DNA of 64,000 nucleotides from Asterias rubens (lineage: Eukaryota): the NCBI RefSeq assembly GCF_902459465.1, contig NC_047080.1, positions 11,966,001-12,030,000 of the forward strand. Direction: 5' to 3'. Positions within the stretch are counted from its first letter, which is position 1, and every line of letters begins with the position of its first letter. Of this stretch, positions 10,101 to 43,163 are shown piece by piece. Position numbers and translations under genes: made by a program. Under the pieces are notes generated by a model that was given only the letters and a program-made list of their open reading frames with translations, searched no databases and was not told the origin of the DNA.

Positions 10101-13100
10101 ATGCAGCAGCTGCCGCAACAGCATCAGTAGCAGCAGCAACAGCACCCATCAAGCCTGAGTCCCAGCCAGAGACGACCCTCGATGAGCCCCCGAAGTCATC
10201 ACTTCCAATCCCCAGTGCTCATACAACCCTCCCAGCCCAGCCGAGTCGGCCAAGTAGTAAAGCTGCACCTCTACCAGCCAAAGTGAAGCGATTAAGTCTC
10301 TCCTCGCCGCCAGCATTAGCGAAGCAGGACACCAAACCATCGTTAACAACACCGCCTCCTTTGCAGTCTCCTCCTCCACTCCAGCCATTACTACAGACAA
10401 CTGCAGCAAGTACAGCATCATTACAAACAGCACCTGTGTCTACAAACGCACATAAAGGTGAGTGGCAACTAAAGAGGACGTTTGAGGTGTTATCCACCTG
10501 CTCTATTCAGAAGCAACACTACTCAATTTACGCACAGTGCTCCCGCAAAACTCACCTCTAAAGGACTTTGTTTCATTCTTAAAAATTGCAAACCTCAGGT
10601 GTTGGCTTGTAGGAACAAGTCAACAAATGTCACTAAAGAAGTACCGTCTTTAATTAGTTGACAGACTCGGGTAATTTTGATTTATTTATTTTTTTATCTT
10701 TCTATCTATCTATTTATTTTGGTTTAAAAATACAAACCATCATCATGGTCAGTAGCATCACAAGGTAATAATAATAATAAAAAGATATTTATAAAGCGCC
10801 AAATTGCCAAAAAGGCCTCAAAGCGCTAGATACAAAGGTAAAAATCAATTTCCAAAAAACAATATTACAATACAGAGGGTGAAAACTGACATGCTTAAAA
10901 TTCTCTTTTTAAAGAATGTTGCATCGTTTTCAGTTTTTATCAAAAATTTGACATCTTTAAATGAAATCAATTGCTGATACAAATCAAATTATTCATTGAA
11001 GTATTAATTGAAATATTTCTTTTCAGATGAGATCCCCAAGGTAGCACCACAGCCTCAACAACAGAGGCGCAAATCTCCAATCCAGCACACCAAGCCACCA
11101 AGCCTTCCTACACCCCCATCTCTCACCCCACTCAAACCCCATGCTACTCCAGCCGCACCTGCAACAAAACCACCACCAAAAGACACCATCAACGATGCAC
11201 CAGTCTTGCCACCTTCACAGCCAGCTCCACTCTCAGCAATACAACCGACTAGACATGACTCCACCACGGACCCCCAGACAGGGATAGACTCACACCCCAA
11301 CAGGGGACCTGAGACAGACCCTGAAACCGACCCAAATCATCTTCCAGAATCTACATCCCAACCCTCCCCTCCATTGCCTCTTGGGGGAAGGCACGAGTCC
11401 CCGGTGTACAGTCCTTCGATGCCGATGTTAGAGAAACCTGATTTGATTCCAATGAAGTTCATGATGGGTGATGATGAAGAGGATGATGAAGATATGGAGG
11501 GGGAGGAAGAGGAGGAGGAGGGTGAAGAAGGGAGCAATGGGACGTCAATGGACATCATCGTTGCATCTCAGCTGCCACCTAACTCACAGACGGCTAGCAA
11601 AGAGCCCAACGCTAAACAACGTGAGTAGACAATTAAAACTAGAGATTTGTTCATTTTGTTTTGTTTTACTCTTACACAGACGTGTTTTAATAAGCACTGT
11701 ACTCTCAGTTCTTTCCTGTGTTCTGTGAAAAAAAATCCACTGGCAAATCACTCGGGTGGGATTCGAACCCAAAACCTTTGCATTGCTAGAGCATTGCTGA
11801 TATTTCTAGAAGAAAATAGAATTTGTTGTTTACCAACCGAAAGGACGGAAAGCTATATGCACCAAAAAAAAAAGGTAATGGTTGATGTTATTTTTGTTAA
11901 AGCCACTCCAGGTTGCCTGTCTAAAAGTCAATCGACCACTCGGTATTTTTCAAAGCATTTTTTTACTTTGCAGAACCGCAAGCCAAGCCCAGTGGTCCTC
12001 CATCCAATAAGAATGTAGAAAATGCTAAGAAGGTTGACCGAGGAACCCCAGGACCAATGAAGAAACCTGCTCAGGATGTTAAGATTCAAAACGTTGGATC
12101 GTGGTCTAACCTTGCCACGGCGCTCAATACGGCCAAGGTCAAGCAATCCACACCCATAGTGAGTCATTCTACCTTTGAGGTCTTCAAGAAAGCTGCTCAG
12201 GAAAAGAAGGAAAGGGTGAGTGAACTTTGACCTCTTTCTCTAGGAACCCCTGAATAAGTTGATGACTTTTGAATCCTGCTTGCACTATAAAGTTGCATTT
12301 TGTTGGACACGGCCCAATTTTATAAAGCTGTAAAGCAGGAAATGCTGCTAGACAATTTTTAAAGCAAAAATCTAAGGGGCCCAATGTATTTTGGGCTGGT
12401 AACCTGTTTTGTGTAAAGCAATACTTTTCTATGCTAAGCAAGTTTTTGTGCTTACAGGCTTTGTGAAATTGGGCCCTGTTGGTTTCTTGTCAGATGTGTG
12501 GTGTGCTCTACAAAGCTGGTTGATGACATTGTACTTTACAGGAAAATCGGACATAACCCAGATTGTAGCGGGGCAAATAAAGTAAAAATTTTTGATACTT
12601 GTGCCTTTCATGATATATCATGGAATTTGGCTCATAGTCAGAGTATGTCATGAGTGAAGATGTTTGGCTTTAGGGCCAGTGCAGATTGGAATTTTGGGAA
12701 AACAAATAGTACTAAAATAACAAGAAATTTTCAAAATGGCTTCTATTGCCGAGAACAAATCTATGCACTAAATTCCATGCTTGTATCATCAAAGGGACAA
12801 TCAAATCAAGTACCTGCTGTATTATTTAGTAGTTAAAGTAGTTGATTTTTCTCTGTGGTCTCCATTCAGGAAAAGGCCAAGAAGCAGCAAGAAGAGATGA
12901 GGAAGACGCAACGAGAGCAAGCTGAGAGAGAAAGACTGAGACAGGAACGGGAAAGATTAAGGTATGAAGACGGTTTACCTTCTATCTGACCTCCTGTTGA
13001 TAAAACATTTCAAAACAGAAATCCTTTTAAAATCTTATTGGTAGATACAATAAAACCTGCAACCAGAATATTGTCGCACATCCCATGTAATTGGTTTCTT

Positions 13101-14129
13101 TAAGAAATGTTCTGAATTTTGTTAAAGGTGTGTTCTCTTTTACAATTTGTTCGGTTGTTTGTATATAAATGATCTTTCCCTCAAGGGAACTCGGCGAACT
13201 CCAACAGCAGGATATAAACACCAAGCTGGCAACAGACAATCTCTCTCATACAAACATTGGTTTAACATCTATGATTACAATTGCACAAATCAAGAAATTG
13301 TGGTTCTAATCACTGTTAAATCAGTTTTTAATTTGGTAGGATTCGAACCAACCACCTTGTGATTGCAAGTCCTGCAGTCTAAGCACTGGACCATTGATAT
13401 CAAAGAAGTTAATTCTTTTAACTAAAAGTCAGTATTGAGACAGTTTTAGACTTAACTATACTAATATCATTTTGGCAAAAAAAAACCCACTAATTTTCTT
13501 ATCCCCAATGCAAAATTCTATTAATTTGATATCAGAAACATGGTAATTTTGTTCTAATAAAAAATAATTATCTGTTCTGTTGCAAACTCCTTTACCAGCA
13601 AAAATGATTGGTATGAATGCAAGCAAATAGTTAATGGCCTGGCATTTTGAACCTAGCAGACTCATTCTTGGAGGCTTATTTTGTTTTTTCTGCAATTTTT
13701 TTTCCAGAGAGAAAGAAGAAGATGAGGCTCTTGAGAGAGCGAGAATGGCTCAGAAGGAAGATCAAAGTAAACAAAATTCACAGAAGGAGAGAGAACGATT
13801 ACGAGAACAAGAACGAAGAAAACGAGAGGCGGTAAGTCGAGTCTTTGAAACAATTTGTAAGATTGTCTTTTGTCTTATCTATTTTAAAATTCTTTGCTTG
13901 AATCTTGGCTAACAGAAAGTTCGCTGGCAGTGTTAAGCCTGGTTCATACTTCCTGTGAATCACGGCTCTGTTTTCACTGCAAATGTTTTTGCAAAATGTT
14001 CATTACCAGATCACTCAACTCCATTTTGACTAAATCTTTTTAATATTGTTGTCAATTGTGCAGATGGCCGGTGCAATCGACATGAATCAGCAGAGTGACA
14101 TCATGGCACAGTTTGAAGAAATGCTTTGA
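439..14129 (+). CDS. BRD4: BET-family bromodomain protein (BRD4-like long isoform), 5'-partial
   Basis: Exons read by eye: 439-618 ([14 protein letters not shown], end of BD2), 1466-1785 (LKSVHEQL, Lys-rich), 2360-2475 and 2881-3051 (ET domain [63 protein letters not shown]), 3930-4058, 4651-4788 (SEED tract), 8662-8744, 9591-9726, 9978/9981-10457, 11027-11620, 11974-12215 ([11 protein letters not shown]...[14 protein letters not shown]), 12870-12961, 13708-13831, 14064-14129 ([22 protein letters not shown]-TEFb-binding C-terminal motif). All GT-AG with consistent phases. Invertebrates usually have one BET gene, so the symbol means BRD2/3/4/T ortholog. Confidence 0.96.
805..1010 (-). mobile_element. 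Degraded tRNA-derived SINE (Deu/Nin-domain-like)
   Basis: B-box-like GGTTCGAATG on the minus strand; body resembles the recalled metazoan SINE central domain (ATTTCTA..CCCCCTGGATG, GGTGGAGAGA). Confidence 0.45.
1823..2225. mobile_element. GGGCCC-ended MITE (host of a nested insertion)
   Basis: Starts GGGCCCAATTTCATAGAGCTGC and ends CCTATGAAAATTCCGGCC; same family recurs at 4890-5153, 15732-15915, 16520-16711, 33556-33802. Confidence 0.7.
1849..2061. mobile_element. TTAA-flanked MITE (Kolobok/T2-like) nested in the GGGCCC MITE
   Basis: Perfect 21-bp TIR AGGGAAGGTACACGTTTGGTA with TTAA on both sides (1845-1848, 2062-2065). Confidence 0.85.
4890..5153. mobile_element. GGGCCC-family MITE, degraded
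   Basis: AATTTCAAAGAGCTG ... CAGCTCTATGAAATTTGGCCC ends. Confidence 0.6.
7100..7137. repeat. Poly(T) run, about 38 nt
   Basis: Uninterrupted T homopolymer. Confidence 0.95.
7483..7488 (+). terminator. Candidate intronic polyadenylation signal for the BET short isoform
   Basis: AATAAA followed by an A-rich stretch and a downstream T-rich tract (about 7525-7555), inside the long-isoform intron 4789-8661. Confidence 0.5.
13338..13398 (-). mobile_element. tRNA-derived SINE head
   Basis: Minus strand TGGTCCAGTGCTTAG (A box) ... GGTTCGAATCC (B box); no complete acceptor stem. Related heads at about 665-750 and 11745-11800. Confidence 0.5.
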
Positions 14130-19700: not shown

Positions 19701-20564
19701 ACCTGTGGAGGAGAACTTCCAGTGAGCTATATTATTTGTAGGATATACTTCTTGTCTTGAGAACTCTGTCATTGGATACAGGGTGACTTGGTCATTGATT
19801 GCCTCCAACGAAATCGATTTTGCATACATAAAACTAATCGACTGGTGACTGTACATGTAGATAACTGTGCCAAATTTACGATAGCTGTTGCACATGTGGT
19901 GAAATGCTAAACCAAAATCATTTCTTGTTAAGCACATAACTTGAAGATCATAAATAAATTTGATGATCAGTATTTTTAAACAATTCCATTCCAATATAAT
20001 ATCGCATATTGGAACCTCATATTTCAAACACCTTCATTTCGAGAAGGATCTTTTATAAACAGACACGAAATGAAAACCAAACTACTACAGATTCAGTTTC
20101 ATAATTCTAATATTATATTTCATCTTCTCCAACTGAAAACTTAACTGGTGATGACATTTGTTTCTCACTACAATCTTATGCACACAGACTCTGAATAAAA
20201 ACTTTGAAGAAATCAAACCAGTTGGTGAACTTTGAATGTGGGATGTTTTATCACAGATCAAAATTACTTGGTCTTTCTGTTCAACACTTTTGTTCACAAT
20301 GGGTCAAAGAATGTTAAAACCACAGTGTCGAACAGCAGAAATGTCTATATAGCTACGAACTCGAGTCAATCTTTCTAAATTGAACGAAAATAAAGCGAAA
20401 ATTGCAAGCTGTGGTAAAATCAACATGTAAACATATGGATTAAGAATAGCTTTTCAGGTTTGTCAACCCGAAAGGCCAATAGTGTAAAATGTGACGCTAT
20501 AAATTAAATATCAACGAGGTGTCCAGAGTGTTCTTGAACCGGCCTTCCGTCCGATGAGCCCGTT

Positions 20565-21460
20565 TTACGGCATGGGGCGAGCGATGGAAAGTGGCATCTT
20601 CTTGGCCGAGGTGAAGCGACGTTTTCTCTGTTGGACATGAGAAGCGACTCCCTCAGACAGACGGAGCAGCAAAGCTTTATCACTTCCTTGTGGCATCTTC
20701 ACTCTCTTCTTAAGATGCGGTTTGAGGTTAGCCATCATCTCAATCATATCTTGCCCTCCTTCTGCCTGATCTTCCCCGTAATGCTCAACATGATTTTTGA
20801 TCCCACGATGTTCTTCTGTTGTTTCCTTGCGTTTCTCTGCTACGACCGAACTCATCCTAGCGGTCTTGGCAGCCGTCTTGAAGGAAGATTTGAGCTTCTT
20901 CAACTGGGTGTTTTTGACTTCTTCGGGTGCATTGGAGCCCTTGATCATTGCTACATCATGCATAAGGCGCTTCTTCATAATGGCCATGTGGGGGTTGGTT
21001 TTGTCATCTTGGACAGCCTGAATAAAATAAGGGGAGAACAAAACTGGTTTATCTGTCAAAAACGGATATTCAGTGATGGCTACTTTTGTGCGCGGTACAA
21101 AAACTTTCAATTGCACTTTTACCATTACCTTTCGAGTAATACCTTGTTGTTGACCGATACATTCGTTAAACGGTGGTGCTAATAAAATAACTATTTTCAA
21201 AATTTCTTGATAAACTAGTAATTAATGTTTAGTTACTGCTTGAGAACTCAGGTTTAATAACACTTGCTGGACTGCTTGACACAAAAGCTATTGCGAGCAT
21301 CGGTAGCTGCGCTCACTGTCATTTCCTTTTTGATGTTACAACAAACTTCGACCTATAAACAAATGATGTATTCAAAACTTACCCTGGCCCGTCTTGAATC
21401 TGCGGCACAAGAAATAGCCAGAATGGCCCCAAACACAACCAAGAAGAGAGCACAGCGCAT
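20565..21460 (-). CDS. Uncharacterised secreted prepropeptide (176 aa), candidate peptide-hormone/neuropeptide precursor
   Basis: Exon 1 is 21460-21383 (MRCALFLVVFGAILAISCAADSRRAR, donor AGG|GTAAGT). Exon 2 is 21017-20565 (polypyrimidine tract + CAG|GCT, phase 0, open to TAA). Hydrophobic signal peptide, RRAR, KKR, KRK, KKR and RKRR sites, and the exons are GC-richer than their flanks. Confidence 0.8.
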
Positions 21461-21841
21461 CTTGATTTCTGAAGAATCTTCGAAGAAACTGTAACTCCAG
21501 ACTATCTCCACTAGACTAACTCTTGTAAATGTTTTTAAGATGCGCAATGAGTTGCAAGCTTACACTTATCCGCAGAAGAAAAAGAAATTGATTTTCTTTG
21601 GTGGTTCTTGGTGCTTCTTATTGATTAAGATCGATGGATCGCGAAGGACGAATTCTCATCGTCATGACTTCGTCAAGTTGTTGGGGAGACAGTTACGTAA
21701 CATTATGAAAAGAATTCAATAGATTGGGAGTGCTTTTAACTAAAAGGGTTACATGGTTTTCAGTGTGCTAGTTTTGTTTCAGTCACGCACAGAAGTGATA
21801 TAAAATTATAGAACTGAATATTCAGTTATTAATCAGACCTT

Positions 21842-25138: not shown

Positions 25139-28100
25139 CTACTTGTCTGACATCTTGAAAGCATCTAAGACTTCAGTGAGGGCGTTAACATCGTCTACAA
25201 AATCCTTAAAGGAGAGCTGGAAGGAAATGAAAACAAAGAGTAATGTACAAGCATTTATAAATAGCAGTATTTACTGAGCAAAAACAAGGAGCCCGTCCTT
25301 GAGAATGTGTCACATTTATATACAAATTTAATTCCTTCACTGAAACAAAAAGTCAATAAAAAGAAAGGTTGCTTATAGTGTTATCTTTCCTCGCCTTCCA
25401 CCTCAGAGCCATGGTTCGAATCCCACTGGGGCACTATGTGGATTGGGTTTTAGTCCCTACCTGTCAGCATGGGTTTTCCCTGGAATGAATCTTTGTGGTT
25501 TTCCCCATGTCTAAAACTCAAATTTCTTGGGGTTCTCTTGACACCTCGACGTCCTTCTGAGAGTCCTTGGCTTCACAACCAGGCTAAATGACATTAAACT
25601 TCATTTCCTTCAAGACGTTATGTTCCTTTCACCTACCTCTTTCTTGACTGCTTTCTTCAATTTTTCAAAATGCTCAAGAACAGAGGGTGCACTAGCCTCA
25701 TGAGCATCTAACTTGGCATTACTGACATCCAAACTGTCATCAGATCGTCCACTTGTCTCTGCTCTCGATGTGACGTTGGTAATAAGCTCTTCACGCGTTC
25801 CTTCAAGGAATAGAGCACCCTCAATGTATCCAAACTGTTTGGTCAAAATAGAACAACCTTTTAATACTTGAATACTTTGCACATAATAATGACTGTGGCA
25901 TTTAGCTCTGTAATATTGGGACAGCTTGCTTTGCTCATGTGTTGCTATGGATGTTTTCAAATATTGACAAGCTGCAAAGACTAGTTCTTCATCATTACAC
26001 CAACTGGGATTGGTTTCCAAAAGTGCTACACTTGATCTTAAAATGTGCATCAATCTTTAGGTTTATTTGTTTACAGCAATATATTTCAAAGAAATCTAGG
26101 TAAAGTTCTGGAGAACAATGTCTACCTACCTCGCTAACAAACGACTCAGCCTGCTCAACTGTCCTTGGAAACCCGTCGACCACAAACCCATCAGCCTCAG
26201 AGTTCTTCTTCACCTCGTCTTGCATCACTTTCAATATAACCTCTTGAGGCACAAGACTACCTGCCAGGATGAGCTTGGCAACATCTTTGCTCTCCTGGGC
26301 CTCAAGCTCGGAAAAGGATCTCAAGAGCTCACCAGCCGAGAGGTGTACAAGTTTGTATTGGGCAGCTATCTTCTTTGCTACTTCTTTCTTTCCAGAGCCA
26401 GGGCCACCTGTATGAAAAAAAACAATCAATTAATAAATCACCCCGTGAACTCAACACTCGCCGCTTCTACACCCTGTCTACAGTCAGACGGCAGTCAGTG
26501 AATGAAAATTCAAGTTAATCTGCTTTGGTGAATGATTTGCAATGCCAGCCTGCAATAATATATCTTGTGGTGAATGCATAGTCAACCTTCTTACGGTCCG
26601 ACCTTTCAATATCATCCACTGTGGTTTTGAATAATAGATAAACTATGCCAGCCTGCAAAAAGATACCATGCAGCACATGACACTACACAGGCAACCCCCC
26701 TACTATCTGTCCATTTAATATAATCCACTATGGTTTCAAATGATTAAGCTATGCCAGCCTGCAATTTGATGTGGTGAATACATCTACACAGTCAACCCTC
26801 CTACTGTCTGCCCATCTAATATCATTCTGACTACTCACCGACAACAAAAATAAATCGTTGTTGTTTCTCTTCTGTTTCCTTCTCCTTGGGTTCTGCCTCC
26901 TTCTGTGTGGGTTCTGCCTCTTTCTCTGTGGGTTCTGCCTCTTTCTCTGTGGGTTCTGCCTCTTTCTCTATGGTTTTTGCCTCCACACCACGCTCCTTTA
27001 AGGCATTCTGCACTGCTGTGAATATACTGTCTGGATCACCCTCAGCTGAAATCTGCCAATGGTAAATAGTTGAAAAAAACCTCAAGTTGTGTGTGTGTTT
27101 TTTTTTTCCCCGCATGATTCAGGAAAGCACACAGCGCTCGACCTACATTGGTGTCAGGATGAAACCATTTGCTTATATTTCATGCATTTATTACATCAAT
27201 TAAGAGATACGCTAACGTTCCTCATCAGAGTCCTGTTTTCCAGCACTCCTCATCTATTCTTGCTCTGTATTAATTCCTGGAAATTAATTTAGGGTTGCTC
27301 CTTGTCTTCTTCCTCTGTCTACTTCTTTTGCTCAAGTCTTCACACTTTGGGAGGCTAATCATCCTTGCGTGCAACAGAGCCAAAGTGGGAAGGATGCGGC
27401 TTCAATGTGTTCGAGCCACAGCCATGAAAGCGCACATCGAGCCATGTATGATTCCATTGCAATGCCTTATATGTCCAACCTTCTCTACTATGAAGGTTGA
27501 ACCAGGCTCTTATCGTCTATTTGACAAGTCTGAAATTCCATATTTTAAAAGATGAGGGCCCTGTCAACTTTTACAGGCAACTTGGAGGCAACCAATTGCA
27601 ATGCATGCTACAGGACCACTTTGGTAGCACACAAGTCATTATTCGAACATTGTCTTAGGTTCCACAAGAAATATAGGTGAAATGTGAATGGCTTTTCTTC
27701 TTGGAAGTTGTCTGGAACTGGTTGCCTTTACATTGCCTCTTGTGACATGCCCAATAGTTGTCCTTGCCCATTACCTTAATAATCTTGTTCTTTTCTTCGT
27801 AGTAATCGACAACAGGCTTTGTAGCATTGTGGAAAGTCGTCAATCTCTTCTTGATGGTCTCTTCATTGTCGTCTACTCGACCGCTTGTCTCAGCTCGTTT
27901 CAATAACCTTTGTGTCATTATCTCATCAGACAGTTCAAAATACAAGGCACATGTGCACTCAGCAATCTGGAAACAAAATCAAAGTCACTTAAAATCCGCA
28001 AAATTTTACAAATTTAACATGTCAACTTGTTGCGAGGTAGTGTGATGTGAGGCAAGTGAAAATAAACTATTATTTCAAAGAAGACAATTTAGCTTTCTCC

Positions 28101-31100: not shown

Positions 31101-34100
31101 GTTAGGAAAAAGTACATGTACCCTTTAAGCACTGACTTGGAGATTAACTGGTAGTTGGGCTCGGCTTAAAATAGATTAACACATGGTGCCACCGTAAACC
31201 TTACCTGATTATACTTCGACCATTCAAGTTTACAATTATTTATTACAATTACTTATTATCTTTACCTTCTTCAGCCTTGTTCTGTTCATCCATCATCGCC
31301 AATGCCTCAGCACCAAGTGCTTCTTTCTGTAGATGAGAAGAAAGTTGGGATATTGAGTGAAGGTAAGAAGAAATTATGTTTCTTAAGAGTTGTAGCATTC
31401 TCTTGTACTAGGTGTACAACTTGTACAAATGTGCACAATAATTTTTTTTAAATGAAGTCAGTGATAGTATTAAATATCTAGGATGTCCTACATAAACATT
31501 AACTGTTAGACACTTATTATTTAATTTTAAAGAAGACTTCGGTTGCTTTACCTCTGCTTCTGTCTTATCCACAATGCTTGGCTCAGTATTTATGTCTGTC
31601 TGGATTGGTGGGAGTGGACTTACTGATTTACCAATTATTCCAAGTTCAACACCTGGTGGAGAAAAATATTAATAAGTTAGACCAAAATACAACCAAGAAT
31701 ATGATATCAAGTACTTGCAATATTGATATTCTAAAAACCAGTCAAGAAATTTAATTAAGACTTAAAAAGCTTGTATTTAGAAGGACAATAAAGATAAGAA
31801 ATTTGCGGTGACACTATGTTAGAACTCTTTACAGTGATCGGTGGTTATGAGAAAAACCAATGAACTCAACGTTTCAGACAGTATACTCTTCTGTGGAGAC
31901 TGCTGGCTTCCAACAGGGTCTATGGCTTATAAAGGAGAGAGTGGGGTATAAGCCATAAGCCCAATTGGAATCTAGCAGTTTCCAGACGACGGACAGAGTC
32001 TACTGTCCGAAGTGTTGAGTCCATCGGTTCTTCTCGAAACCAGCGATCACTCTAAAGAGATCTAACTGGATGGTGTCACCGCAAATTTCTTATCTTTATT
32101 GTCCTTCCCAAATTCAAACCTTAAAACAAAGTTTGTAGCATGTAGGAAAGTCATAACTGTATTTGGGAAACTTCAGTGGGATTTTTTTTTAGGGGGTAAT
32201 CAATAACTTACTGTCTTTTGCAGCTTCAGGGTGTGGGGTGAAGAAACGTGAATCAATTAGTTTAGAGATATCGTAGAAAACTTCATCAACATCACGATCA
32301 CAGTTGACCTTGAGAAGAAATAAAAATTCTAAGATTAAAGAATATTCCTCACTAAGAAAGTACCTATGAAGTGTGTTACAACAATCTTTGGGAAGAATCA
32401 GCAAACAAAACGTCTATTTTGAAAAAGACAAACAATATACATCCAATAAAGTTTGAAAATAAACAAATAAGAAAAATCTGCGAACAATTTACTCTTTCAG
32501 TACCACGGTCAGCTGGCCAAGGTAGATGTACGATCTTTTTTATTCACTCAAAAAGTGTAATAAATAGTACATAAATGACCAATAAGATACATGTTATCAC
32601 CTGAGGGCATTATCACTCAAGAAATACTATTCACTTTGGGATGAACCAGGGCAACACCAATCGGCAAGAAACATTTTGTTTGTCAAAAAAAGACAAATTT
32701 TGTGTGTGCAGAATTTTGAAAAAAAAACAAAAAAAACACGTGGCATTTGATGTTCAAAACGAAAATTAAAAGTGGGCAGTGATTTAGTTAAAATAGCATT
32801 TAATAAAAAATCAAAGTTTTAAGATCCTACCGTTTCTAAAAGTCCCTTGTTCTCAAAGTGTTGAGTAACTGACACTGCACCTTCCTTAAAGTTGGACAAC
32901 CTGTTGGAGATAGCAGCATCAGTGTCGTCAGCTCGGTCACTTTCTTTCATCCGTTTCTCAAGACGGTTCTTTAGTCTCATCTCATCACACATCAAGAACA
33001 AGGCAACGTCTGCCGAACCAAACTATCAACAAAATTTACAAAATAAAGAATATTGAAACAAACATACATGGTTTAAGCCAGGATTTGGTTAAAGGGTGTC
33101 CAAATTTGCTGATTTTTTTTAACAAATTGTGAGAAAGGGTCTTAGAAAATCCCAAAGAAAGTTATAACCGTAAGTGCACCAAACAAATCCTCCTGTACCC
33201 TGATGTATGATTGATGTATAACCAAACCACAGTGGTGCCAAACCATGAATGTTTGACTTGAGACGAGGCAAACAACTTAAAGTTTCAATCTGTGGTTGTT
33301 GAGTTATCAGATAGGTTCAAGGTTAAATTTGAGTCAGGGCTCAAAATTTGTGGATACAATTCAGAGGACTGAAAGGGCTTGTGACCCACAGTCTAGAAAT
33401 GTTTTTACAAGACTGGAATAAAAAATAAACACTTTAACATTAATTTTTTTTTATTAGAGATATTACAAAGTGAGGTATTTCTGTTCAATTGAAAAACCAT
33501 AAGACCGACATGTCCAGTTGTGAGTCTACTTGCTAAACACTAAAATCATTAGCCTCAGGCCAAATTTAATAGAGGTGCTAAGCACAAAAATTTGCTTAGC
33601 CACTAAATTTCTTCCTTGATAAAACAGGATTACCAACCAAACTTCCATGTGACTTTCAGGATAACCCCAAACAACAGCTGAATACCAGTAACAAGCAATA
33701 CGCAACAAATGGAAATTTGGTTGGTAATTTTGTTTTTATCAAGGTAGAAATTTCATGCTAAGCAAACTTTTGTGCTTAGCAGCTCTATGAAATTGAGCTC
33801 TGTTGTCCAGGGTTAATTTTTAGCTCTATTGACGATGTAGGGATTAAGTCAGACTTACTTGTTTCTCAAATGCTTGCACTTGTTCCACACTCCGGGGGAA
33901 CCCCTCTATGATAAATCCCAGGATGTCTGGTTGCTTGGCTGCTTTACTCTCGATCTTTTTCTGCACCAAGTCAAGCGCCATTTCCTAGAAATACAAAGTT
34001 ATATTAATAATAAAGACATTTGTAACGCGCCAAATGCAAAAGCCTTTAAGCGCATAAAGAGACCAATCAAATATACAATGAGTGAAAGATACAATTACAA

Positions 34101-36669
34101 ATAAGCAGAATACAAACAAGCAACTTCAAACAAATGAGTTTTTAAAAGAGACTTACAACAGTGTAAAGAACTATTCTGGCAAATATGCACAGGAAGACTA
34201 TTCCAAAGAAAAAGGGCGTCGTAAGAAAATGATCCGCAATACCTTTGTTCGACTTGATATTCCAAATAAATTTTCTGCAATATGAAATCAAATTTACGAA
34301 AGTATGAATGTCTTACATGGGGGATAAGTTGCCCACTCGACACAACATCAGCCAGCATTTTCCACTTATCATCTTGGGGGTACTTCCTAAACTTGCGTCG
34401 CAGTAAGTTACCAACAGAAATGTGTAGGTATCCCTTATACCTGTCGGCCAGTCTGTGACAGTGCTCCCTCTTACTGCTACCTGGGCCACCTGTCAGGTCA
34501 ATTACATCCCAAATAATTAGTAGTGACAAATAATAAATAGAAAGTTTGTAATAGTAATAATAATAGTGGCTTCTTATATAGAACGCATATCCGTCACAGG
34601 CGCTTATCATACAGTATTTTTCTGCAAGATAGGGGGACTACGTTTATATTATGCACTCTGATTGGTCGAAAACTAGTCACATGGGGTGCATTAACATGTG
34701 AAATAAAGACCAGCTCTGTGAACTTTTGATTAATTGACCCCTAAACAAGCATACTGCTTTGTAAAAGTTATGTATGCACACTAAACTTGATGTGCACTGA
34801 ACTATCAAATAAACTTGTTTTTTTTTTGCGCGCAGGCCTCAAATAAACTCATGGCACACACAGAATTTGCTGTGTTGCCGTGTGTTTTGCTGTGGTGTCT
34901 TTTGTAAGGTTTTAATACAAGTTCAAATTTTTCTAATAAAAGTGCCCCTTAGCAGAGGGAAATTGATTCAAGGCCTGTGATGTTTTCATGTATTATAAAC
35001 AAGTAGGTTGCAGAGTTTTTAGTAACCCACAGGGCAAGTTGACAAGTTGTGCGTACTAACCCATATCAGCGATATTTGTCAGTGCTTAGAATTTGCTTTT
35101 TTTCTTCTTTTTTTTTAAACACTTACCAAGAACAAAGATGAACCTGATGTTAGGGAAAGGGAACTGTTTGACAGTGGTTACCGATGGTGACGTAGCAATT
35201 GGAGGCAGTGGACTGGAACGCTTCATTCCTAATGGTACTTCTGTAATAATAATGACAAGGGTTTAAATGAATTTGGCAGGATAAACCAATTAAAGAAAAA
35301 ACAAACAATGAAAAAACAAACAATGAAAAATTGTCAAAATTATGTTTGTACAGCAAGACAAGGCAACCTATTTGTGTTTGAAAACTTCTTCATTCCCCCT
35401 TTTCTTTTACTTAGGGTGAGGACACAACTTATTAGCTTAAATTGGAAATAAGGATAGTTTTTTGACACTCACTTCTAAAAGTTTTTTCAGAAAAGCTTTT
35501 TTCAGAAAAAAAGTTTGATAATTTTGTTAAATGGTGATAGTTTCTTGTTTATTAGGAAATCAAACGCTTATAGCATACCTGTAGTGAATGTAGGTTCACG
35601 TTCCAACGCTGGAGCAGCTTGGGTTGTATTAATGGGTGGCAAGGGAGCCTGACCTTTGACCTCATCAACAAATGTATTCCAGCGAACTCCATCACCTTGC
35701 TGTGTGCCTTTAATCTTGGTCAGGCATTCCAGCATATAATCTACATGGTCGCCTGGCTTATGGTACATCAGTCCAGTCATAAGACTCTGAAATCAGAAGC
35801 ATGATTTTATGGGTCAAAATTAGTGCCAAGTTTTAGGTTCCTTCCTCCGTGGTTTAGTGACTCCCTGATGAACAGACCTTAGTTTAAAGTAGTTTTTTAA
35901 GTACGATTTCTTTTATGAATCCTTCATGAGTTAATTATAACTTTTCAAGTGTAATGTTTTTCACGCCAATTGAAAATATTATGTTTGAAACAAAACAAAA
36001 ATATAATGCAAATACTAAATAGGTAAAGATTAACAGTGTATAACAGGCGAAGGGACACAAAAACTTAAAGTACATAACATTTATACATTACTGGGAAAAG
36101 TTTCCGTATGGCGCCACCACTTTTTCATTCGATATGAAATAATATAGTATCTAATTTACCTCAATGAGATATTCCTTTTTGTAAAAATGAGTGAAAAGGT
36201 GGTGGCGCCATACAGAAAGTTATCCCAACACTGTGCCGTTAATAACTTAAGTGAGAAGAACAAATGGCTATTTTATTGTAAAGTAGGCTTTATCACGGTT
36301 AAGTCAGCACTAAAAATGGGTGGCCTTCAAATGATCAACAAATGACAATTTTATATTTTCTAAAAGATTTCATTATCATTCATTTAATTTAATAATGCCT
36401 GATTTTCGGATCGTAATAAAACAAATATAAAGATAAACAAATTAAATAAATTGAAATTAACTCAATTCTAGCACAAATGCGGCTCACTGTTTATTGGAAG
36501 AAAAAAAAACCTGCAAATAATTAAATAGAAAAAACGCTTATAAGTATTGTTGTCCGGGAACTGGACACATGAAGTTATCCTGTCCCACCGACTGCCTTGC
36601 CCTTACCTCAAATAACTGCGGAATTTCCCGTTTTGACAAATACGTCTTGGTATCATCTCTGGATGCCAT
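25139..36669 (-). CDS. AK5: Adenylate kinase 5-like protein with N-terminal dimerisation domain and three AK domains (905 aa)
   Basis: 20 exons (plus coordinates): 36607-36669 ([21 protein letters not shown]), 35579-35786, 35127-35240, 34317-34489 (GGPGSSK), 33859-33984 (EGFPR), 32831-33022, 32212-32308, 31552-31652, 31266-31326, 30378-30464, 29957-30037, 29666-29743, 29352-29408, 28968-29170 ([21 protein letters not shown]), 28527-28643 (DGYPR), 27775-27966 ([13 protein letters not shown]), 26839-27052, 26130-26407 (GGPGSGK, DGFPR), 25637-25834, 25139-25216 (stop). Total 2718 nt with consistent phases. Confidence 0.93.
25385..25540 (+). mobile_element. tRNA-derived SINE with V-domain-like body
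   Basis: GGTTCGAATCCC B box then GGGGCACTATGTGGATTGGGTTT...TGGGTTTTCCCTGGAATG...; homologous copy on the minus strand at 60245-60412. Confidence 0.6.
26880..26975 (-). repeat. Coding 21-bp repeat (EKEAEPT x ~4) in the AK linker exon
   Basis: GAGAAAGAGGCAGAACCCACA repeated on the minus strand. Confidence 0.9.
30705..31124. mobile_element. TTAA-flanked fold-back MITE
   Basis: TTAA|AGGATCCGGGTACTTTT ... AAAAGTACATGTACCCT|TTAA, with imperfect internal inverted symmetry along most of its length. Confidence 0.75.
31780..32107. mobile_element. Palindromic fold-back element built from two inverted Penelope-like terminal repeats
   Basis: Perfect outer inverted repeat GAAGGACAATAAAGATAAGAAATTTGCGGTGACAC; arms stay imperfectly complementary to the centre (CTATGGCTTATA / TATAAGCCATA); each arm has hammerhead-like remnants. 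Confidence 0.7.
33556..33802. mobile_element. GGGCCC-family MITE
   Basis: CAGGCCAAATTTAATAGAGGTGCT ... AGCAGCTCTATGAAATTGAGCTCTG. Confidence 0.7.
33997..34262 (-). mobile_element. LINE (L2/CR1-type) 3'-end fragment
   Basis: Minus strand translates [34 protein letters not shown], typical of the L2/CR1 ORF2 C-terminus, followed by an (ATT)n-like tail. Confidence 0.7.
36093..36226. mobile_element. ~133-bp MITE
   Basis: TIR GGGAAAAGTTTCCGTATGGCGCCACCAC; near-identical inverted copy at 53159-53290 and degraded copy at about 54960-55085. Confidence 0.85.
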
Positions 36670-38080: not shown

Positions 38081-41000
38081 TTAAGAGGCAGTTTCTTCCT
38101 CCCCTTTGCTGTCCACCTGTTCCTCCAATTCACCAGGCCACTCCCGCCCGGGCCCCTCGTGTTCCTCTTCTGCTAAAGCAATCCATTTACGCCCAGGCCA
38201 AAACATCACAACAAACATAACAAGGGCGCTGAAAGTAGCCACAGCCAACGCAAGACCATTGTATGATAGTCTGTAGTAGTCTCTGTCGTATAGCAAACAG
38301 GCTCCTACACCGTCGCAAGATTCCTGCCATACCACACAGGCGGAGTCTATCAAAGAGCCGAAAATCAACCCTGATGGTACGATTCCTGAAGAAGAAAAAA
38401 AAATACAAAGTTTAAAATCGCATTGTCCTGTGTGACAGGCAGGATAAAACGGGCGGCAAGCAGCATGTCAACCCTTAAGCGCCATATATTTTATCCCGAC
38501 AGATTTGTGCTTTCTTCGAATAAATCTTCACAGTCTTATTAAAGGCCTGTTTTATTTTTATGGTGTAATAAGTTTGGGCGATTCACATTATAATACGCCT
38601 TGAAGAGCTGTCCAGGGGCCGATTTCACTAAACTTTAAATCAATCGCAAACAGCCAATATCCATCGCAAATCAGTCGCAAGTTTGCGACGGATTTAAAAA
38701 ACTGATTTCTCTAAAGTCGGACGTTTTGAAACCCATCTGGGCCCAATTTCATGGCTCTGCTTACCGCCGAATTCTGCGCTTACGATCGCGATTCCCCGCT
38801 TACGTGCAAGCGCCGAATTTCTGCGCTAGCCTTGTAAGCGTAGAATGCATAGTAACGTGGAGTACGCACGCGCAGAAGCCAACATTCACCGCTTACCCGT
38901 GAAATACGCTTGCCGTAAGCACAGAATTCCCTGCTTCCGTAAGCGCCGATTCTTTGCTTACGGTAAGCAGAGCCATGAAATTGGGCCCAGCTGTCCAGAG
39001 CCTGTTTCTCGCTGTGCGTCATTGAGGCGAGACAACGTCCATGTAATTTGCAACTTCAAGAACCCTAAAAATGTGTTTTTCATTTGTTTACTGTGGACGT
39101 GAATGTTTGTCAAACCTACCTATTATCTGCGTCAAGTACGCCAAGCACAGCGCCACCAGTCGATTGGCTGAAGATGTTGATCTAGAATGATTGGGAAAAT
39201 TTATTTATCAACCATTATTTGATTTATTTGAATCATTCAACAGTTCATTTTCACTTTTTAATTTATTCCACCCAATATCATCATTCTGTAAGGGACAACT
39301 GAATCCAAACACAGATAGTGTTAAAACATGTTTTATTTATTTTTTTGTGGGGGGGGGGATGCTTGGATATCATTATTTGATTTTTTAAAAAGTTGGCAGT
39401 AAAACAAGGAGGATCAGGGTCCAATTTTATCAAGTTTTTAAGCACACAAATACGTACAAAATAAACATGTTGCAGAAACATGCTTCCAGCCAAAAAGTTC
39501 CCTTTTTTCTTTTCTTTTTTTTCTGCTAATATCTGCTTCATGAAATTCGGCCCAGATTCCCAGTCAGTGACTTTGGTTTCACTTACCGAACAATGATTGT
39601 CAGTCGTAGGAGATCACTGAATGTAGCCAACACAAACACACAGATCAGCACAATGAGGAATATAACCCCACTCCCACAGGGAGAGAAACAAGCGCCCTCT
39701 ACAACTGAACTAGACATTTGAAGTTCGTCAGAGTCGTTAAAAGAGGCAGTCTCACATGCACAGTCAGTGAAACTTTTCTGTAAAGAAAGAAGATTCCAAC
39801 AAATTAAAGATTATTATTATTATTATTTTTTTTGAGGGGGTGGGGGGTAAGGAGATGACTAGAGATGAAAAAAACTTTGAGCAGAAAAGAATGTTGGTAC
39901 TCTTTCTAAACATGCACCAGAAGTTTCATCAATTTGTTCACTGGACACTTGTCTTGTAAATCAATCAACAAAAGACTCTAAATTTGACGAAGATTTCTGG
40001 ACCAATTCTTGTACCTTTTGCTTCCACCTGCCTAAAAATATCAACAACTATTTTGAAAATAACTAGATCCCTTGCATTGACCGCAATCTTTGATGCAATA
40101 AAACATGCACGCGTGTACAAACGGTGCACGACTCTCATCCAATGGTAGCTCTTCGGTGCATGTTTCATCAGCTATGGCCGCCAATGAAAGTGGTCAGTTT
40201 GTTTTAGAAGCTTACGTTAACACTTGATTGAGCGCATCCAGCGTGGCATGCGGAGAAATAAGTTACTCCGACTTCGTTGCAAACGGGGGCGTAGACAGAC
40301 AGAGAACAAGAACAGTTGACATTACATGGTGCTTCCAGGTCGACTGATGAACTCTGCTTGCTGTGTAAAAAAAAAAAAAAGGGATCAAAGCAATAATGGT
40401 CAAGACAAATTAAAAACTCAAATGATGAAGTGCAAAAACTGTGTTTATACAAAGATATGCAAAATAAAAACGTGGCTTTGCGAAGAAAACAACGTTCAAT
40501 TAAATGAAGCAAGTTTAGTTGAGACAGATGTGCTGCGGAGACCGGTTGCACTCTTCTGTTGACGTAACGTTAACTGTTGGAATGCATTCGACCATTTCCA
40601 TCCCAACTGCATTTTTGTGTTTGTTTCTTGCCATAATTTTTGAAGAGCTTTTAAATTGTTTCTTACCTTAATCCATCGTAGCTGGAGAAGACACCGGCAA
40701 CGTTGTTATTGTCGCATCCAACAAACATGAGCAAGAAAAGACCAAACACACACCCAGTCAGGACGCCGCATGTAAGACGGATTATTGCCCTCAGTTTCAA
40801 GTTGAGTTTCTTCACTAGGAAACCGGCAAGCAGTTCACCCACAGCGTAGGCAGGAGCCAGTAAAATACCTCAAGAAGATGTAAAGGTTGGTACATGTTTT
40901 ATTATTTTGTATTTCTCGTCGTAAACTCTTTCTTTTTAATTTGAGACTTTTGAACGCTAGGTGGCAGCAGACTTACCGGGTTAACTTCCAGTTCTGAACG

Positions 41001-43163
41001 TGTGCACATTATCGAGAACAATGGACGTCTACATGTTGCCACGCGTCCCAAAAGTCTCACAAAATGTGGCAAGATGCCTTGGATATTGACTATACTAATA
41101 ATATGAGCAAGAACAAGATTATTGTTATATCACGACATGAATTAAATAAGTAAATGCAAGTAGATTTAATGCTTACCTGTCAGTAGATCGGCGTCTTGTC
41201 TTCCATAACCAAACTCAACCTCGAGGTACTTGGGTATAAAGACACCGTAGCCATAGAGAATGAAGTAGAAGCTGCTCTGTGATAAACACGTCACTGAGCA
41301 GTACGGATTCTTCAGAGTGTTCAACAAGGCCCGGAAAAACTCTGTGAAATTTTAGACAAAGGATAGTCTTTCTGAAAGCAAATTATTATTTTGAGTTATT
41401 ACAAAATTGATTGAAAAAACAGTAAACAGTTTGCAACAGATAGTTTTATGTTCTCATAATTATAAACGACCTACCTTTTGCGGTCAGGTACCCTTCCTCG
41501 CTCGACACTTTGTTATTCACTTCCTTTCCACTCACTACATCATACTCCCCATGACTCGATGATGGCATCTTCCGTGGAAAGAACAGGAACAACGTCGAGA
41601 AGATAATGAAGACTATCCCGACCACTAAGTAACCAAGCCACCACGCCCCAATCCATTCCGAGTCCTCCGGGCTGAGAGCGAGTACGGAGCCGTGCTCCAA
41701 GCCGTAAAAATCCACCCAGACACCGATGACAGCAGCAGTAAGCATGACCCCAGCAACGGGCCCGAGGCCCAATACAGCATTGACAATGCCTGGGAATGAG
41801 TAAACATATCAACAAAACTTTAATTTTCTTTAAGGTGTTGGATAGGTAGCCTACTAATAGCTCAAATTTGACCTCGCCCTGGGGTTCGTTCTTTATGTTA
41901 TTGGGGAGCTGGAATGTGAAGGCGTGGTGTGCATTATAAGCATGGGGATGGCAGCTTTTTGCAACATTCAGTATTTCAGTTTTAAAAACAAATTGCGAAA
42001 AATAATTGTCATTTCATCAGACGAGGTCAAGAAGCCATGAAAACTCGTAAGACAATTTTTTTCTGTTTTCTTTTATTTTTTCTCAAATCTTCGGTCACAG
42101 AAGGACTTGACCAGTAGTCCAGGGAAATTAACCTGTCCTTAAAAATATGTGTCTTATATGGGAGTTGAGTCATTGCATGGTGAGGAATTCAGTATATCAA
42201 TACATTTTGTTTGCGGTAAAACACCATGTTTGTTTCTACTTGCAGATTTTCTATCTTGCTTATATTTTTTATTCTGACTACAGCGGAGTAGATTTTCAAA
42301 ATGTGCCTTCTTCCAAAAGTCCCTGGTCAGAAATGGACGATGGACTTCAAATTGATGAATCGTGCTATACGCCTAACACAAAGTATCTGTGGTGGTCAAT
42401 TCCCTTGCTATTTTTTCTCTCTCTTCAAATATACTTTTTTTCTGGACCAACTATGAGGCTTCTCGACAACCAGCTTACCGATGTAAAGCGATGTGGTTCC
42501 TGGTGTAGTGCAGTCAGAGATGTAAGCGATCCCTATGGGGTACACGAGCATCACACACATGCCTTGCAATGCGGACCCTAAAACAAAGATGTAATAAGCC
42601 GCGCTAGTAGATGATATCCCGTGAGATACGCCATCACCACAATCCTGAGAATGTCCTGAACAAGTCAGCACCGCCGAGCTAAGAGTCCCATCTGTTTGGT
42701 TTTCCAACCCGGCAAGACTTGGAGGTGTATACGGACCCTGAATAAATTGTGGCAGACTCTGAACTGCCATCGCCAGACCGCTGATCACCCCACAGATCCC
42801 CATCAGTCGAGGGCGGTTGCTGCCAGATCGGCTGCCGACGTACATCGCAAAAAGCAGGCCCACGATTCCGCCAGTGCAGTACCCAGTCTGCATGCTGCCG
42901 AGCTCCGTCAGGGTGAACTGGAAGCGGGCTTCGATTGAGGTGATCGAGCCGGTGATGATGCCGACATTAAGACCGTCACAGGCAACGAAGAGGCACATGA
43001 CCAGGAGGAACACACCTGGCCTTGCGAAGCGTTGGAGGCACGATGGCCTCCACCAGAAGTACCCGCATTTGGTATCTACATCTTTCTCTATGGTATCTAC
43101 AACCATGGATGGTGAACCAACATCTTTGATACCTCGGTCCTCATCAGAATGTGCAACATCCAT
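38081..43163 (-). CDS. Organic anion transporting polypeptide (SLCO/OATP family), 689 aa
   Basis: Exons 42479-43163, 41475-41789 (DSEWIGAWWLGY, OATP signature-like), 41177-41341, 40667-40868, 40216-40360 (Kazal CNVNCSCSLSVYAPVC), 39587-39777, 39120-39181, 38081-38385 (IFGSLIDSAC). Total 2070 nt with consistent phases. Subfamily not assignable by eye. Confidence 0.93.
38737..38990. mobile_element. Young GGGCCC-ended MITE
   Basis: Perfect ~30-bp TIR CTGGGCCCAATTTCATGGCTCTGCTTACCG; CpG-rich interior with repeated GCTTAC/GTAAGC motifs. Confidence 0.9.

What the first reader, a model, noticed from the sequence alone, without database searches (positions are those of the whole stretch)
20565..21460. 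Orphan two-exon secreted prepropeptide gene between BRD4 and AK5
Seen: a signal peptide exon spliced in phase 0 to a 150-codon exon; a furin-like RRAR just after the signal; internal KKR, KK, KRK, KKR and RKRR sites; an acidic spacer (ETTEEH...EDQAEGGQD); no Cys in the mature region and no Gly-amidation signals. This is prohormone architecture. It does not match any echinoderm neuropeptide precursor I recall, and the ORF track only shows it as an intron-extended ORF.
Basis: partly seen in the sequence, partly recalled or inferred. Interest (0 to 1): 0.8.

Follow-up and report, generated by a model that had tools for sequence, protein, structure and literature searches.

The report
Orphan secreted sea-star pre-pro-protein gene
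This is a real, spliced and expressed sea-star gene for a small secreted, very basic protein with protease-cutting sites and no detectable relatives outside the genus Asterias; it looks like a hormone precursor, but that function is unproven.

Summary
On the minus strand, a 26-codon signal-peptide exon (21460-21383) is spliced in phase 0 across a 365-nt GT..AG intron to a 150-codon exon (21017-20568, stop 20567-20565). RNA contigs from three independent marine metatranscriptome studies show exactly this junction.

The 176-aa product has a signal peptide, RRAR, six further multibasic sites, no Cys after the signal peptide and no Gly-amidation signal.

Asterias amurensis RefSeq already carries the same gene as an "uncharacterized protein" (XP_071801912.1). 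It sits in the same place, between an AK5-like and a BET/BRD gene, and differs only by V9L.

Against that ortholog, exon 2 has 7 synonymous and 0 non-synonymous changes. Intron, UTRs and flanks differ by about 5% and carry indels. The whole polypeptide is therefore under purifying selection.

An exhaustive phmmer search, Pfam, PDB sequences, the Atlas and two metagenome scans found no other relative. The gene is single-copy.

It is well represented in plankton RNA and was not picked up in two species-labelled RNA-like runs that hold BRD4.

My reading is a lineage-restricted secreted precursor cut by convertases. "Prohormone" is plausible but unshown.

The scan's separate note on this same DNA, that the C-terminus resembles apelin/Elabela, is nominally unusual. 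No profile supports it, and published work places the apelin-receptor clade in vertebrates only.

The parts
21461..21525 (-). 5' UTR. The transcript start lies at about 21524/21525. There is no upstream ATG.
   Evidence: RNA contigs of X1 and X2 begin at 21524 and 21525. Sequence read.
21383..21460 (-). Exon 1 coding part, 26 codons. It encodes the signal peptide (about residues 1-19/20), a short pro-piece and RRAR (residues 23-26, nt 21394-21383).
   Evidence: Translation. Spliced in RNA. One substitution against A. amurensis, V9L.
21018..21382 (-). Intron, 365 nt, phase 0, GTAAGT...polypyrimidine tract...CAG.
   Evidence: Skipped in RNA contigs of three studies. 5.6% substitutions and 13 gap columns against A. 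amurensis.
20568..21017 (-). Exon 2 coding part, 150 codons. The product is Cys-free, basic (pI 10.4) and hydrophilic, with KKR, KK, KRK, KKR, RKRR and KK sites.
   Evidence: Translation. Composition. Seven synonymous and 0 non-synonymous differences and no indels against A. amurensis.
20616..20627 (-). RKRR (residues 157-160). This is the best furin-type site, R-X-K/R-R, and it precedes the C-terminal peptide.
   Evidence: Sequence read. Cleavage is inferred, not shown.
20568..20615 (-). C-terminal 16-residue peptide FTSAKKMPLSIARPMP. If the internal KK is also cut, the product is MPLSIARPMP.
   Evidence: Predicted as non-helical coil with low confidence. Similarity to apelin and ELA quantified.
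20565..20567 (-). Stop codon TAA.
20091..20564 (-). 3' UTR of at least about 470 nt. Its end is not defined and no canonical AATAAA was seen.
   Evidence: Contigs of X1 and X2 run 81 and 109 nt beyond 20200. Sequence; polyadenylation-signal scan.

Best explanation
This is a single-copy, two-exon protein-coding gene of a sea star. The window's genome fits Asterias rubens. The gene encodes a 176-aa pre-pro-protein that enters the secretory pathway.

Proposed steps:
1. Signal peptidase removes residues 1-19/20.
2. A furin-type convertase cuts after RRAR26, which coincides exactly with the exon junction. This removes a 6-7-residue pro-piece and exposes AVQDD...
3. The second strong furin site, RKRR160, releases the C-terminal 16-mer FTSAKKMPLSIARPMP.
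4. The weaker KKR, KK and KRK sites could give further peptides (14, 22, 20, 38 and 25 residues) in cells that express PC1/3 or PC2.

The products are hydrophilic, Cys-free, non-amidated and probably disordered or loosely helical. They act outside the cell as signalling or other extracellular molecules during the planktonic (embryo/larva) phase.

Shown: the gene, the splice, its transcription, its orthology and synteny in A. amurensis, and purifying selection over the whole length.

Inferred: secretion, every cleavage step, the stage of expression and the signalling role.
For: - Splice junction and transcript ends come from RNA contigs of three studies.
- The first AUG of the transcript opens the ORF, followed by a classical n/h/c signal sequence with S-C-A at positions -3 to -1.
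- RRAR and RKRR fit the furin motif.
- The A. amurensis ortholog is 175/176 identical and sits in the same AK5-like / BET-gene interval.
- In exon 2, dS is 0.077 and dN is 0. The chance that all 7 changes are synonymous under neutrality is 1.9e-5. The 95% upper bound on omega is about 0.17.
- Neighbouring intron, UTRs and flanks differ by 4.5-9%, with indels.
- A model with short constrained peptides and unconstrained spacers is rejected (P of 0 non-synonymous changes = 1e-6; P = 0.004 even with spacer omega 0.4).
- There is no hydrophobic core and no amphipathic helix (GRAVY -0.91; max muH 0.51, shuffle P = 0.43). A globular fold is therefore unlikely.
- At least 8 marine or seawater metatranscriptome studies hold the mRNA-sized share of the locus. 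They hold almost none of the neighbouring BRD4 3' region.
Against: - No peptide, cleavage or cell-type data exist.
- The excess of adjacent basic pairs is weak (P = 0.027) in a protein that is 22% K+R.
- There are no amidation signals and no repeated peptide motif.
- The gene is not in the radial-nerve precursor catalogue.
- AlphaFold in single-sequence mode draws long helices straight through several basic sites, with pLDDT up to 94 for residues 41-80.
- Uniform conservation over 150 codons fits an intact functional protein just as well.
- Abundance relative to BRD4 in plankton RNA is higher than one would naively expect for a gene expressed in a few neurons.
Confidence: 0.5

Rival explanations
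1. The gene encodes a secreted extracellular protein that works essentially intact: about 150 residues, basic, Lys/Met-rich, helical or disordered. It could be a component of the larval or embryonic extracellular matrix, mucus, an adhesive or a protective coat, or a binding protein. The dibasic motifs would then be a by-product of its Lys/Arg-rich composition.
For: - The whole 150-codon exon is uniformly constrained, with 0 non-synonymous changes.
- The dibasic excess is only marginal (P = 0.027).
- Long helices are predicted confidently across KKR and KK.
- Representation in plankton RNA is high relative to BRD4.
- The gene is absent from the nerve-cord neuropeptide catalogue.
Against: - There is no hydrophobic core, no Cys, no amphipathic helix and no domain.
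- Two sites, RRAR and RKRR, fit the furin motif rather than being mere K/R pairs, and furin is in the pathway any secreted protein takes.
- The RRAR site sits exactly at the exon junction after the signal peptide, as in classical pro-proteins.
Confidence: 0.33
2. The C-terminal peptide is a functional counterpart, by homology or convergence, of the vertebrate apelin/ELABELA ligands. It would be a small C-terminal Pro/Met-rich peptide released after a multibasic site, acting on a rhodopsin-type GPCR during development.
For: - In an end-anchored ungapped comparison, 7 of 18 residues are identical to the human apelin C-terminus and 5 of 13 to the ELA C-terminus.
- Chance estimates are 1e-4 to 2e-3 and 1e-3 to 9e-3 respectively. 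The joint estimate is 0 to 7.5e-5 across the three composition nulls, before any look-elsewhere correction. The human sequences come from PMC7154429.
- In both cases the peptide lies at the extreme C-terminus, directly before the stop codon and after RR/KK.
- Like ELA, the gene seems to be expressed in early life stages (inference).
Against: - No Pfam hormone family is hit at E <= 10, and no PDB ELA chain is matched.
- The precursor is 176 aa, against 54-77 aa for ELA and apelin.
- The basic residue before the P-M-P is displaced by one position, and the terminal Phe of apelin is missing.
- After correcting for roughly 100 peptide families and the dozens of candidate precursors this scan has flagged in the genome, the match is P ~ 0.03-0.4.
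- Published CLANS and phylogenetic work places the apelin/angiotensin/bradykinin receptor group in a vertebrate-only clade (PMC10792014).
- Exactly this peptide was not found in JGI metagenome contigs.
Confidence: 0.06
3. The gene is a very diverged member of a known secreted-protein family, for example UCMA/Gla-rich protein or PTH/PTHrP-type, that the sequence searches failed to recognise.
For: - The Pfam UCMA model aligns colinearly over positions 6-118 of 134 with E = 0.004 and 17.6 bits.
- UCMA is also a small secreted protein cut by furin (my own knowledge).
- Recalled from memory only: PTHrP also has a short pro-piece, a mature N-terminus AV... and multibasic clusters.
Against: - The UCMA score is 10 bits below the gathering threshold. 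It falls to 13.7 bits (E = 0.064) without the signal peptide.
- The protein has only 11 Glu in 155 residues, so it is not Gla-rich-like.
- There is no Pfam Parathyroid hit, and no PTH or PTHrP chain among PDB matches at E <= 10.
- Exhaustive phmmer found no vertebrate protein.
Confidence: 0.04
4. The gene is a young or non-functional ORF on a transcribed locus, in effect a non-coding RNA with a fortuitous ORF.
For: No homolog was found outside the genus. The Atlas recognition score is low, 1386.
Against: - Exon 2 has 7 synonymous and 0 non-synonymous changes and no indels, while surrounding non-coding DNA has about 5% substitutions plus indels.
- The first AUG opens the ORF.
- The signal peptide is intact.
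Confidence: 0.02

Closest known systems
Orphan candidate neuropeptide precursors of Asterias rubens (Arnp11-Arnp25; Semmens et al. 2016, PMC4772807)
   Same: Small secreted proteins of 83-157 aa with a signal peptide, dibasic sites and acidic spacers. They have no similarity to peptides of other phyla. They come from the same animal or genus.
   Different: It is not one of them: no length or sequence string matches. Most Arnp peptides carry Cys pairs or a C-terminal Gly for amidation, and this protein has neither. Those were found in adult radial nerve, whereas this gene is seen in plankton RNA.
Preproapelin and ELABELA/Toddler (APELA)
   Same: Secreted, basic precursors whose active peptide is the extreme C-terminus behind multibasic sites. 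The local resemblance is ...L-S-x-x-x-P-M-P to apelin and M-P-L...P-x-P to ELA. ELA is an embryonic gene that was long taken for non-coding RNA.
   Different: The precursor is 2-3 times longer. There is no profile-level similarity. The receptor clade is reported as vertebrate-only (PMC10792014). The resemblance is not significant after look-elsewhere correction.
UCMA / Gla-rich protein (Pfam PF17085)
   Same: A small secreted, charged, helical protein with a signal peptide and a furin-type cut. There is a sub-threshold colinear Pfam alignment (E = 0.004).
   Different: The score is below the gathering cut-off (17.6 against 27.6 bits). The protein is not Glu-rich. UCMA is known only from vertebrates (my own knowledge).
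Classical pro-proteins with a short pro-piece (for example proPTH, proalbumin; from general knowledge)
   Same: A signal peptide is followed by a 6-7-residue pro-piece that ends in a multibasic convertase site.
   Different: No sequence relationship was detected.

Membership tests
Neuropeptide / prohormone precursor (generic kind) | N-terminal signal peptide | tested here: met
   The sequence is MR + a 14-residue hydrophobic core + SCA|A, read directly from the sequence. No SignalP was available.
Neuropeptide / prohormone precursor (generic kind) | Peptides flanked by mono- or dibasic convertase sites, more than composition predicts | tested here: inconclusive
   Seven multibasic sites are present. 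Adjacent basic pairs number 12 against 7.2 +/- 2.1 in shuffles, P = 0.027.
Neuropeptide / prohormone precursor (generic kind) | Bioactive peptides more conserved than spacers across species | tested here: inconclusive
   Only one ortholog is available, 175/176 identical. The whole of exon 2 is invariant at the protein level, so regions cannot be ranked.
Neuropeptide / prohormone precursor (generic kind) | Expression in neurons or endocrine cells; processed peptides detected | not testable with these tools
   Only bulk RNA contigs are available. The gene is not among the 40 radial-nerve precursors of PMC4772807.
Apelin / ELABELA ligands | Match to the family profile or significant sequence similarity | tested here: not met
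   No Pfam hit at E <= 10 for the C-terminal 45 aa or the whole protein. No ELA chain among PDB matches. The short-motif identity of 7/18 and 5/13 is only nominally unusual.
Apelin / ELABELA ligands | Cognate APLNR-type receptor in the same genome | not tested
The literature (PMC10792014) reports that the apelin/angiotensin receptor group connects only to vertebrate sequences.
UCMA / Gla-rich protein (PF17085) | Pfam score at or above the gathering threshold (27.6 bits) | tested here: not met
   17.6 bits for the full length and 13.7 bits for exon 2 alone.
UCMA / Gla-rich protein (PF17085) | Glu-rich (Gla) C-terminal domain | tested here: not met
   There are 11 Glu in 155 mature residues and no Glu-dense C-terminal half.
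PTH / PTHrP | Match to the Parathyroid profile or to PTH/PTHrP sequences | tested here: not met
   No Pfam hit. No PTH or PTHrP chain in the PDB phmmer search at E <= 10. The resemblance (AV start, LMHD) is recalled from memory only.

The most novel reading that the evidence does not exclude
The gene encodes an embryonic or larval secreted signalling precursor restricted to the sea-star lineage. Its conserved C-terminal Pro/Met-rich peptide (FTSAKK-MPLSIARPMP) would be a developmental ligand that works like ELABELA/apelin on a gamma-rhodopsin-type GPCR. That would make it either a case of convergence or the first trace of an apelinergic-type ligand outside vertebrates.
Probability: 0.06. Interest if true: 0.85.

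Novelty: new member of a known kind. Interest (0 to 1): 0.4.

Why it matters
Asterias rubens is the reference echinoderm for neuropeptide biology, and its precursor catalogue was built mainly from adult nerve.

This gene is strongly constrained, secreted and rich in convertase sites, and it lies outside every known family. It appears mainly in plankton RNA, so it would add a candidate developmental or larval signalling molecule to that catalogue.

It is also a clean example of a taxonomically restricted gene that is nevertheless under tight purifying selection. If it turns out to be a structural larval protein, it is of ordinary interest.

Tried and rejected
**Searches for relatives**
- The word-index protein search with exon 2 and with the full-length ortholog found only the gene's own cluster.
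- Exhaustive phmmer against 1.84 billion representatives gave self plus P0002. P0002 is a 1199-aa repeat protein whose E-value came from five identical copies of one weak 37-residue match. I rejected it as chance.
- The ESM Atlas feature search gave no usable hit.
- Searching the window's own genome for paralogs found none.
- Two JGI metagenome scans found nothing: one with six peptide patterns of the protein and one with back-translated MPLSIARPMP plus stop.

**Searches for a known family or fold**
- Pfam on the whole protein and on its N- and C-terminal 45-mers gave only sub-threshold UCMA, NNH6 and similar hits.
- PDB sequence searches with the whole protein and the N- and C-terminal parts gave only chance hits (mevalonate kinase, DatZ, an ABC transporter).
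- A test for amphipathic helices, as in antimicrobial peptides or apolipoproteins, was not significant.
- The single-sequence AlphaFold model is all helix at mean pLDDT 70. I did not use it for fold search, because isolated helices give meaningless matches.

**Literature**
- String searches for the protein in 8.4 million papers returned nothing.

**Other readings considered**
- A-to-I editing at 20546 was rejected. A. amurensis DNA carries the same base as the RNA, so this is a SNP of the reference animal.

- I could not recover the BRD4-AK5 interval of other sea stars. No in-session protein id for the large neighbouring genes could be obtained, because of the length window of the protein search.
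- I sent no complex-prediction job, because I make no binding claim.

Full report
**What is there**

On the minus strand, the first ATG of the transcript (21460) opens a 26-codon exon, MRCALFLVVFGAILAISCAADSRRAR. It ends at a GTAAGT donor.

After a 365-nt intron (21382-21018) with a polypyrimidine tract and CAG acceptor, the frame continues in phase 0. It runs through 150 codons (21017-20568) to TAA at 20567-20565.

The 176-aa product has Cys only at positions 3 and 18, both inside the signal sequence. It carries RRAR 23-26, KKR 41-43, KK 66-67, KRK 88-90, KKR 129-131, RKRR 157-160 and KK 165-166.

It has an acidic stretch at 91-115 and no Gly followed by basic residues. After the signal peptide it is 22% K+R, has 11 Met, pI 10.4 and GRAVY -0.91.

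**Is it transcribed and spliced as predicted?**

Yes. I laid Logan contigs of four RNA runs from four studies on 20200-21800. Three of them (X1, X2, X4; marine or seawater metatranscriptomes from three different studies) join 21383 directly to 21017.

They skip 365 nt with CT..AC on the plus strand, which is GT..AG on the gene strand. The shorter side of the junction is 118-144 nt long.

Two contigs start at 21524 and 21525, which gives a 65-nt 5' UTR without an upstream ATG. They run 81-109 nt beyond 20200, so the mRNA is at least about 1.07 kb.

The only consistent difference from the window is at 20546 in the 3' UTR. The RNA there carries the base that A. amurensis DNA also has, so it is a SNP of the reference animal and not RNA editing.

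**Whose gene, and is it conserved?**

The window's assembly is 417.6 Mb in 150 contigs. I treat the species name as an inference.

The protein cluster contains XP_071801912.1, "uncharacterized protein [Asterias amurensis]". It is 176 aa and differs from the window's product only by V9L in the signal peptide.

Its locus, CP134966.1, has the same neighbours: a multi-ADK (AK5-like) gene 3.5 kb upstream, and a 1486-aa gene on the other side that aligns to the window's BET/BRD gene.

In the window itself, Pfam confirms a BET domain at 2802-3194 (+), ADK domains at 25995-26429 and 34095-34610 (-), and an OATP transporter at 42408-43163 (-).

I aligned the two species over 3.5 kb:

| Region | Substitutions | Gap columns |
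|---|---|---|
| CDS (531 nt) | 8 (1.5%) | 0 |
| Intron | 5.6% | 13 |
| 3' UTR | 4.5% | 9 |
| 5' UTR | 9.2% | 0 |
| Flanks | 4.6-8.8% | 34-73 |

By the Nei-Gojobori method, exon 2 has dS 0.077 and dN 0 (7 synonymous, 0 non-synonymous). The probability that all seven fall on synonymous sites under neutrality is 1.9e-5. At the non-coding rate, 16-20 non-synonymous changes would be expected.

For the whole CDS, omega is 0.039. For exon 2 the 95% upper bound is about 0.17.

A model in which only about 35 codons (the peptides) are constrained and the rest is free spacer is rejected at P = 1e-6. Even spacers with omega 0.4 give P = 0.004.

The ORF is therefore a real coding sequence, and the whole polypeptide matters, not just one short peptide.

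**Relatives**

None were found beyond the genus.
- The word-index search returned only the gene's own cluster. That cluster holds two intron-extended ORFs from ENA marine assemblies and the A. amurensis protein.
- The exhaustive phmmer search of 1.84 billion representatives added only P0002. This is a repeat protein whose score is five copies of one weak 37-residue match.
- The gene is single-copy in its own genome.
- Two scans of JGI metagenome contigs found nothing.
- The Atlas features gave no usable hit and a low recognition score.

The window's own spliced 176-aa product is not a member of the cluster. It therefore seems not to be in the protein collection, while the sister species' model is.

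A caveat applies. In a database this large, an ortholog needs roughly 40 bits or more to pass the threshold. A strongly diverged or unannotated ortholog in Patiria or Acanthaster is not excluded.

**Known families**

- *Pfam.* Only sub-threshold matches appear. The best is UCMA (PF17085), E = 0.004 and 17.6 bits against a 27.6-bit cut-off. It is colinear over most of the model but drops to 13.7 bits without the signal peptide. The protein is not Glu-rich. I do not file it as UCMA.
- *PTH/PTHrP.* No apelin, APELA or Parathyroid model is hit. No PTH, PTHrP or ELA chain appears among PDB matches at E <= 10. My recalled resemblance to PTHrP (short pro-piece, AV start, LMHD) therefore has no statistical support.
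- *Starfish catalogue.* The protein is not among the 40 A. rubens precursors of Semmens et al. 2016, by length and description. None of its strings occurs in the paper library.

**The apelin/ELABELA lead**

An earlier first-stage note on this same DNA (s1-150126) pointed to the C-terminus. I took the human sequences from PMC7154429.

The last 18 residues share 7 identities with apelin, anchored one residue before apelin's terminal Phe. The last 13 residues share 5 identities with ELA.

Random sequences reach these values with these probabilities:

| Comparison | Probability by chance |
|---|---|
| Apelin, 7/18 or better | 1e-4 to 2e-3 |
| ELA, 5/13 or better | 1e-3 to 9e-3 |
| Both together | 0 to 7.5e-5, depending on the composition model |

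That is nominally striking. However, the comparison was chosen after the fact from roughly a hundred peptide families. It was also chosen from dozens of candidate precursors that this scan has flagged in this genome. A fair corrected value is about 0.03-0.4.

Published clustering and phylogeny place the apelin/angiotensin/bradykinin receptor group among vertebrate-only sequences that arose in the vertebrate stem (PMC10792014). I keep this reading as a low-probability case (about 6%).

**Expression context**

The mRNA-sized share of the locus (0.34-0.55 of the sampled words, where the mature mRNA would give at most 0.63) is held by metatranscriptome runs. These come from at least eight marine or seawater studies, including poly-A and oligo-dT libraries.

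As a control I searched the 3' exon and UTR of the neighbouring BET/BRD gene. Only two metatranscriptomes hold it, at 0.05-0.06.

Conversely, two species-labelled, RNA-like runs (X21, X22) hold the BRD region at 0.25-0.33 but 0.00 of this gene.

Contig data cannot give expression levels, and tissue labels are coded. The pattern is what a strongly stage- or tissue-restricted gene would give: abundant in planktonic embryos or larvae and silent in the sampled species-labelled material. This step is inference.

**Structure and physical character**

A single-sequence AlphaFold model is all-helical (H3-33, H35-52, H58-131, H138-162). Mean pLDDT is 70, rising above 90 for about residues 41-70. The last 14 residues are coil.

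There is no hydrophobic core. No 18-residue window has an amphipathic moment beyond what shuffles give (max 0.51, P = 0.43).

The mature product is therefore most likely an extended or disordered polypeptide. It is neither a globular domain nor a membrane-active helix.

**Most likely mechanism**

A pre-pro-protein enters the ER, and signal peptidase cuts after residue 19 or 20. A furin-type convertase cuts after RRAR26, which is exactly the exon boundary. RKRR160, a full R-X-K/R-R site, releases the C-terminal 16-mer.

The KKR, KK and KRK sites may be used where PC1/3 or PC2 are present. They would give peptides of 14, 22, 20, 38 (acidic), 25 and 10 residues.

I put about 0.5 on this convertase-processed secreted precursor. 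I put about 0.33 on an essentially intact secreted basic protein. Small amounts go to an apelin/ELA-like ligand, a diverged known family, or a non-functional ORF. The last is effectively excluded.

**Novelty and verdict**

The gene model exists in RefSeq for the sister species as an uncharacterised protein, so the gene's existence is not new. Its family, function and early-life expression pattern are uncharacterised.

It is a new member of a known kind: a lineage-restricted secreted pre-pro-protein or candidate prohormone. Interest is moderate. It would rise sharply only if orthologs single out the C-terminal peptide or if a receptor is found.

Noticed in passing
window 20546 (3' UTR, 19 nt after the stop codon): All four RNA runs read C on the + strand, which is G on the mRNA strand, where the assembly has T. 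This looks like an A-to-G change on the transcript. A. amurensis DNA has the same G, so it is a SNP of the reference individual rather than A-to-I editing.
   Followed up: yes
window 20400-21600 compared with 11008-14100: Marine metatranscriptomes from at least 8 studies hold this small gene's mRNA but almost none of the neighbouring BET/BRD gene. Species-labelled RNA-like runs X21 and X22 show the reverse. Sea-star (probably larval) transcripts are evidently a recurrent component of coastal plankton RNA data sets.
   Followed up: partly
P0001 and P0004 (ENA contigs of 1635 and 1876 nt): Two ENA metagenome assemblies contain genomic, intron-bearing copies of this locus. They were gene-called prokaryote-style as intron-extended ORFs of 186 and 211 aa. 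One carries an intronic variant (C>S in the read-through translation). This is Asterias DNA in marine metagenomes.
   Followed up: no
P0002 (ENA contig of 152,784 nt): A 1199-aa protein with at least five identical ~123-residue tandem repeats. It has Pfam matches to UPF0193 and to the baculovirus PEP N-terminus. It surfaced only as a chance hit.
   Followed up: partly
window 21461-21525 compared with L001: The 5' UTR differs from A. amurensis at 6 of 65 positions (9.2%). That is more than the intron (5.6%) or the 300 nt upstream of the transcript start (4.0%). The sample is small and this may be noise.
   Followed up: no
window 40204-43163 (-) and 56728-57072 (+): An OATP/SLCO transporter gene is present (first large exon 42408-43163; a Kazal-like Cys pattern lies in the ORF at 40204-40551). 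A 114-aa ORF at 56728-57072 has no Pfam match.
   Followed up: partly
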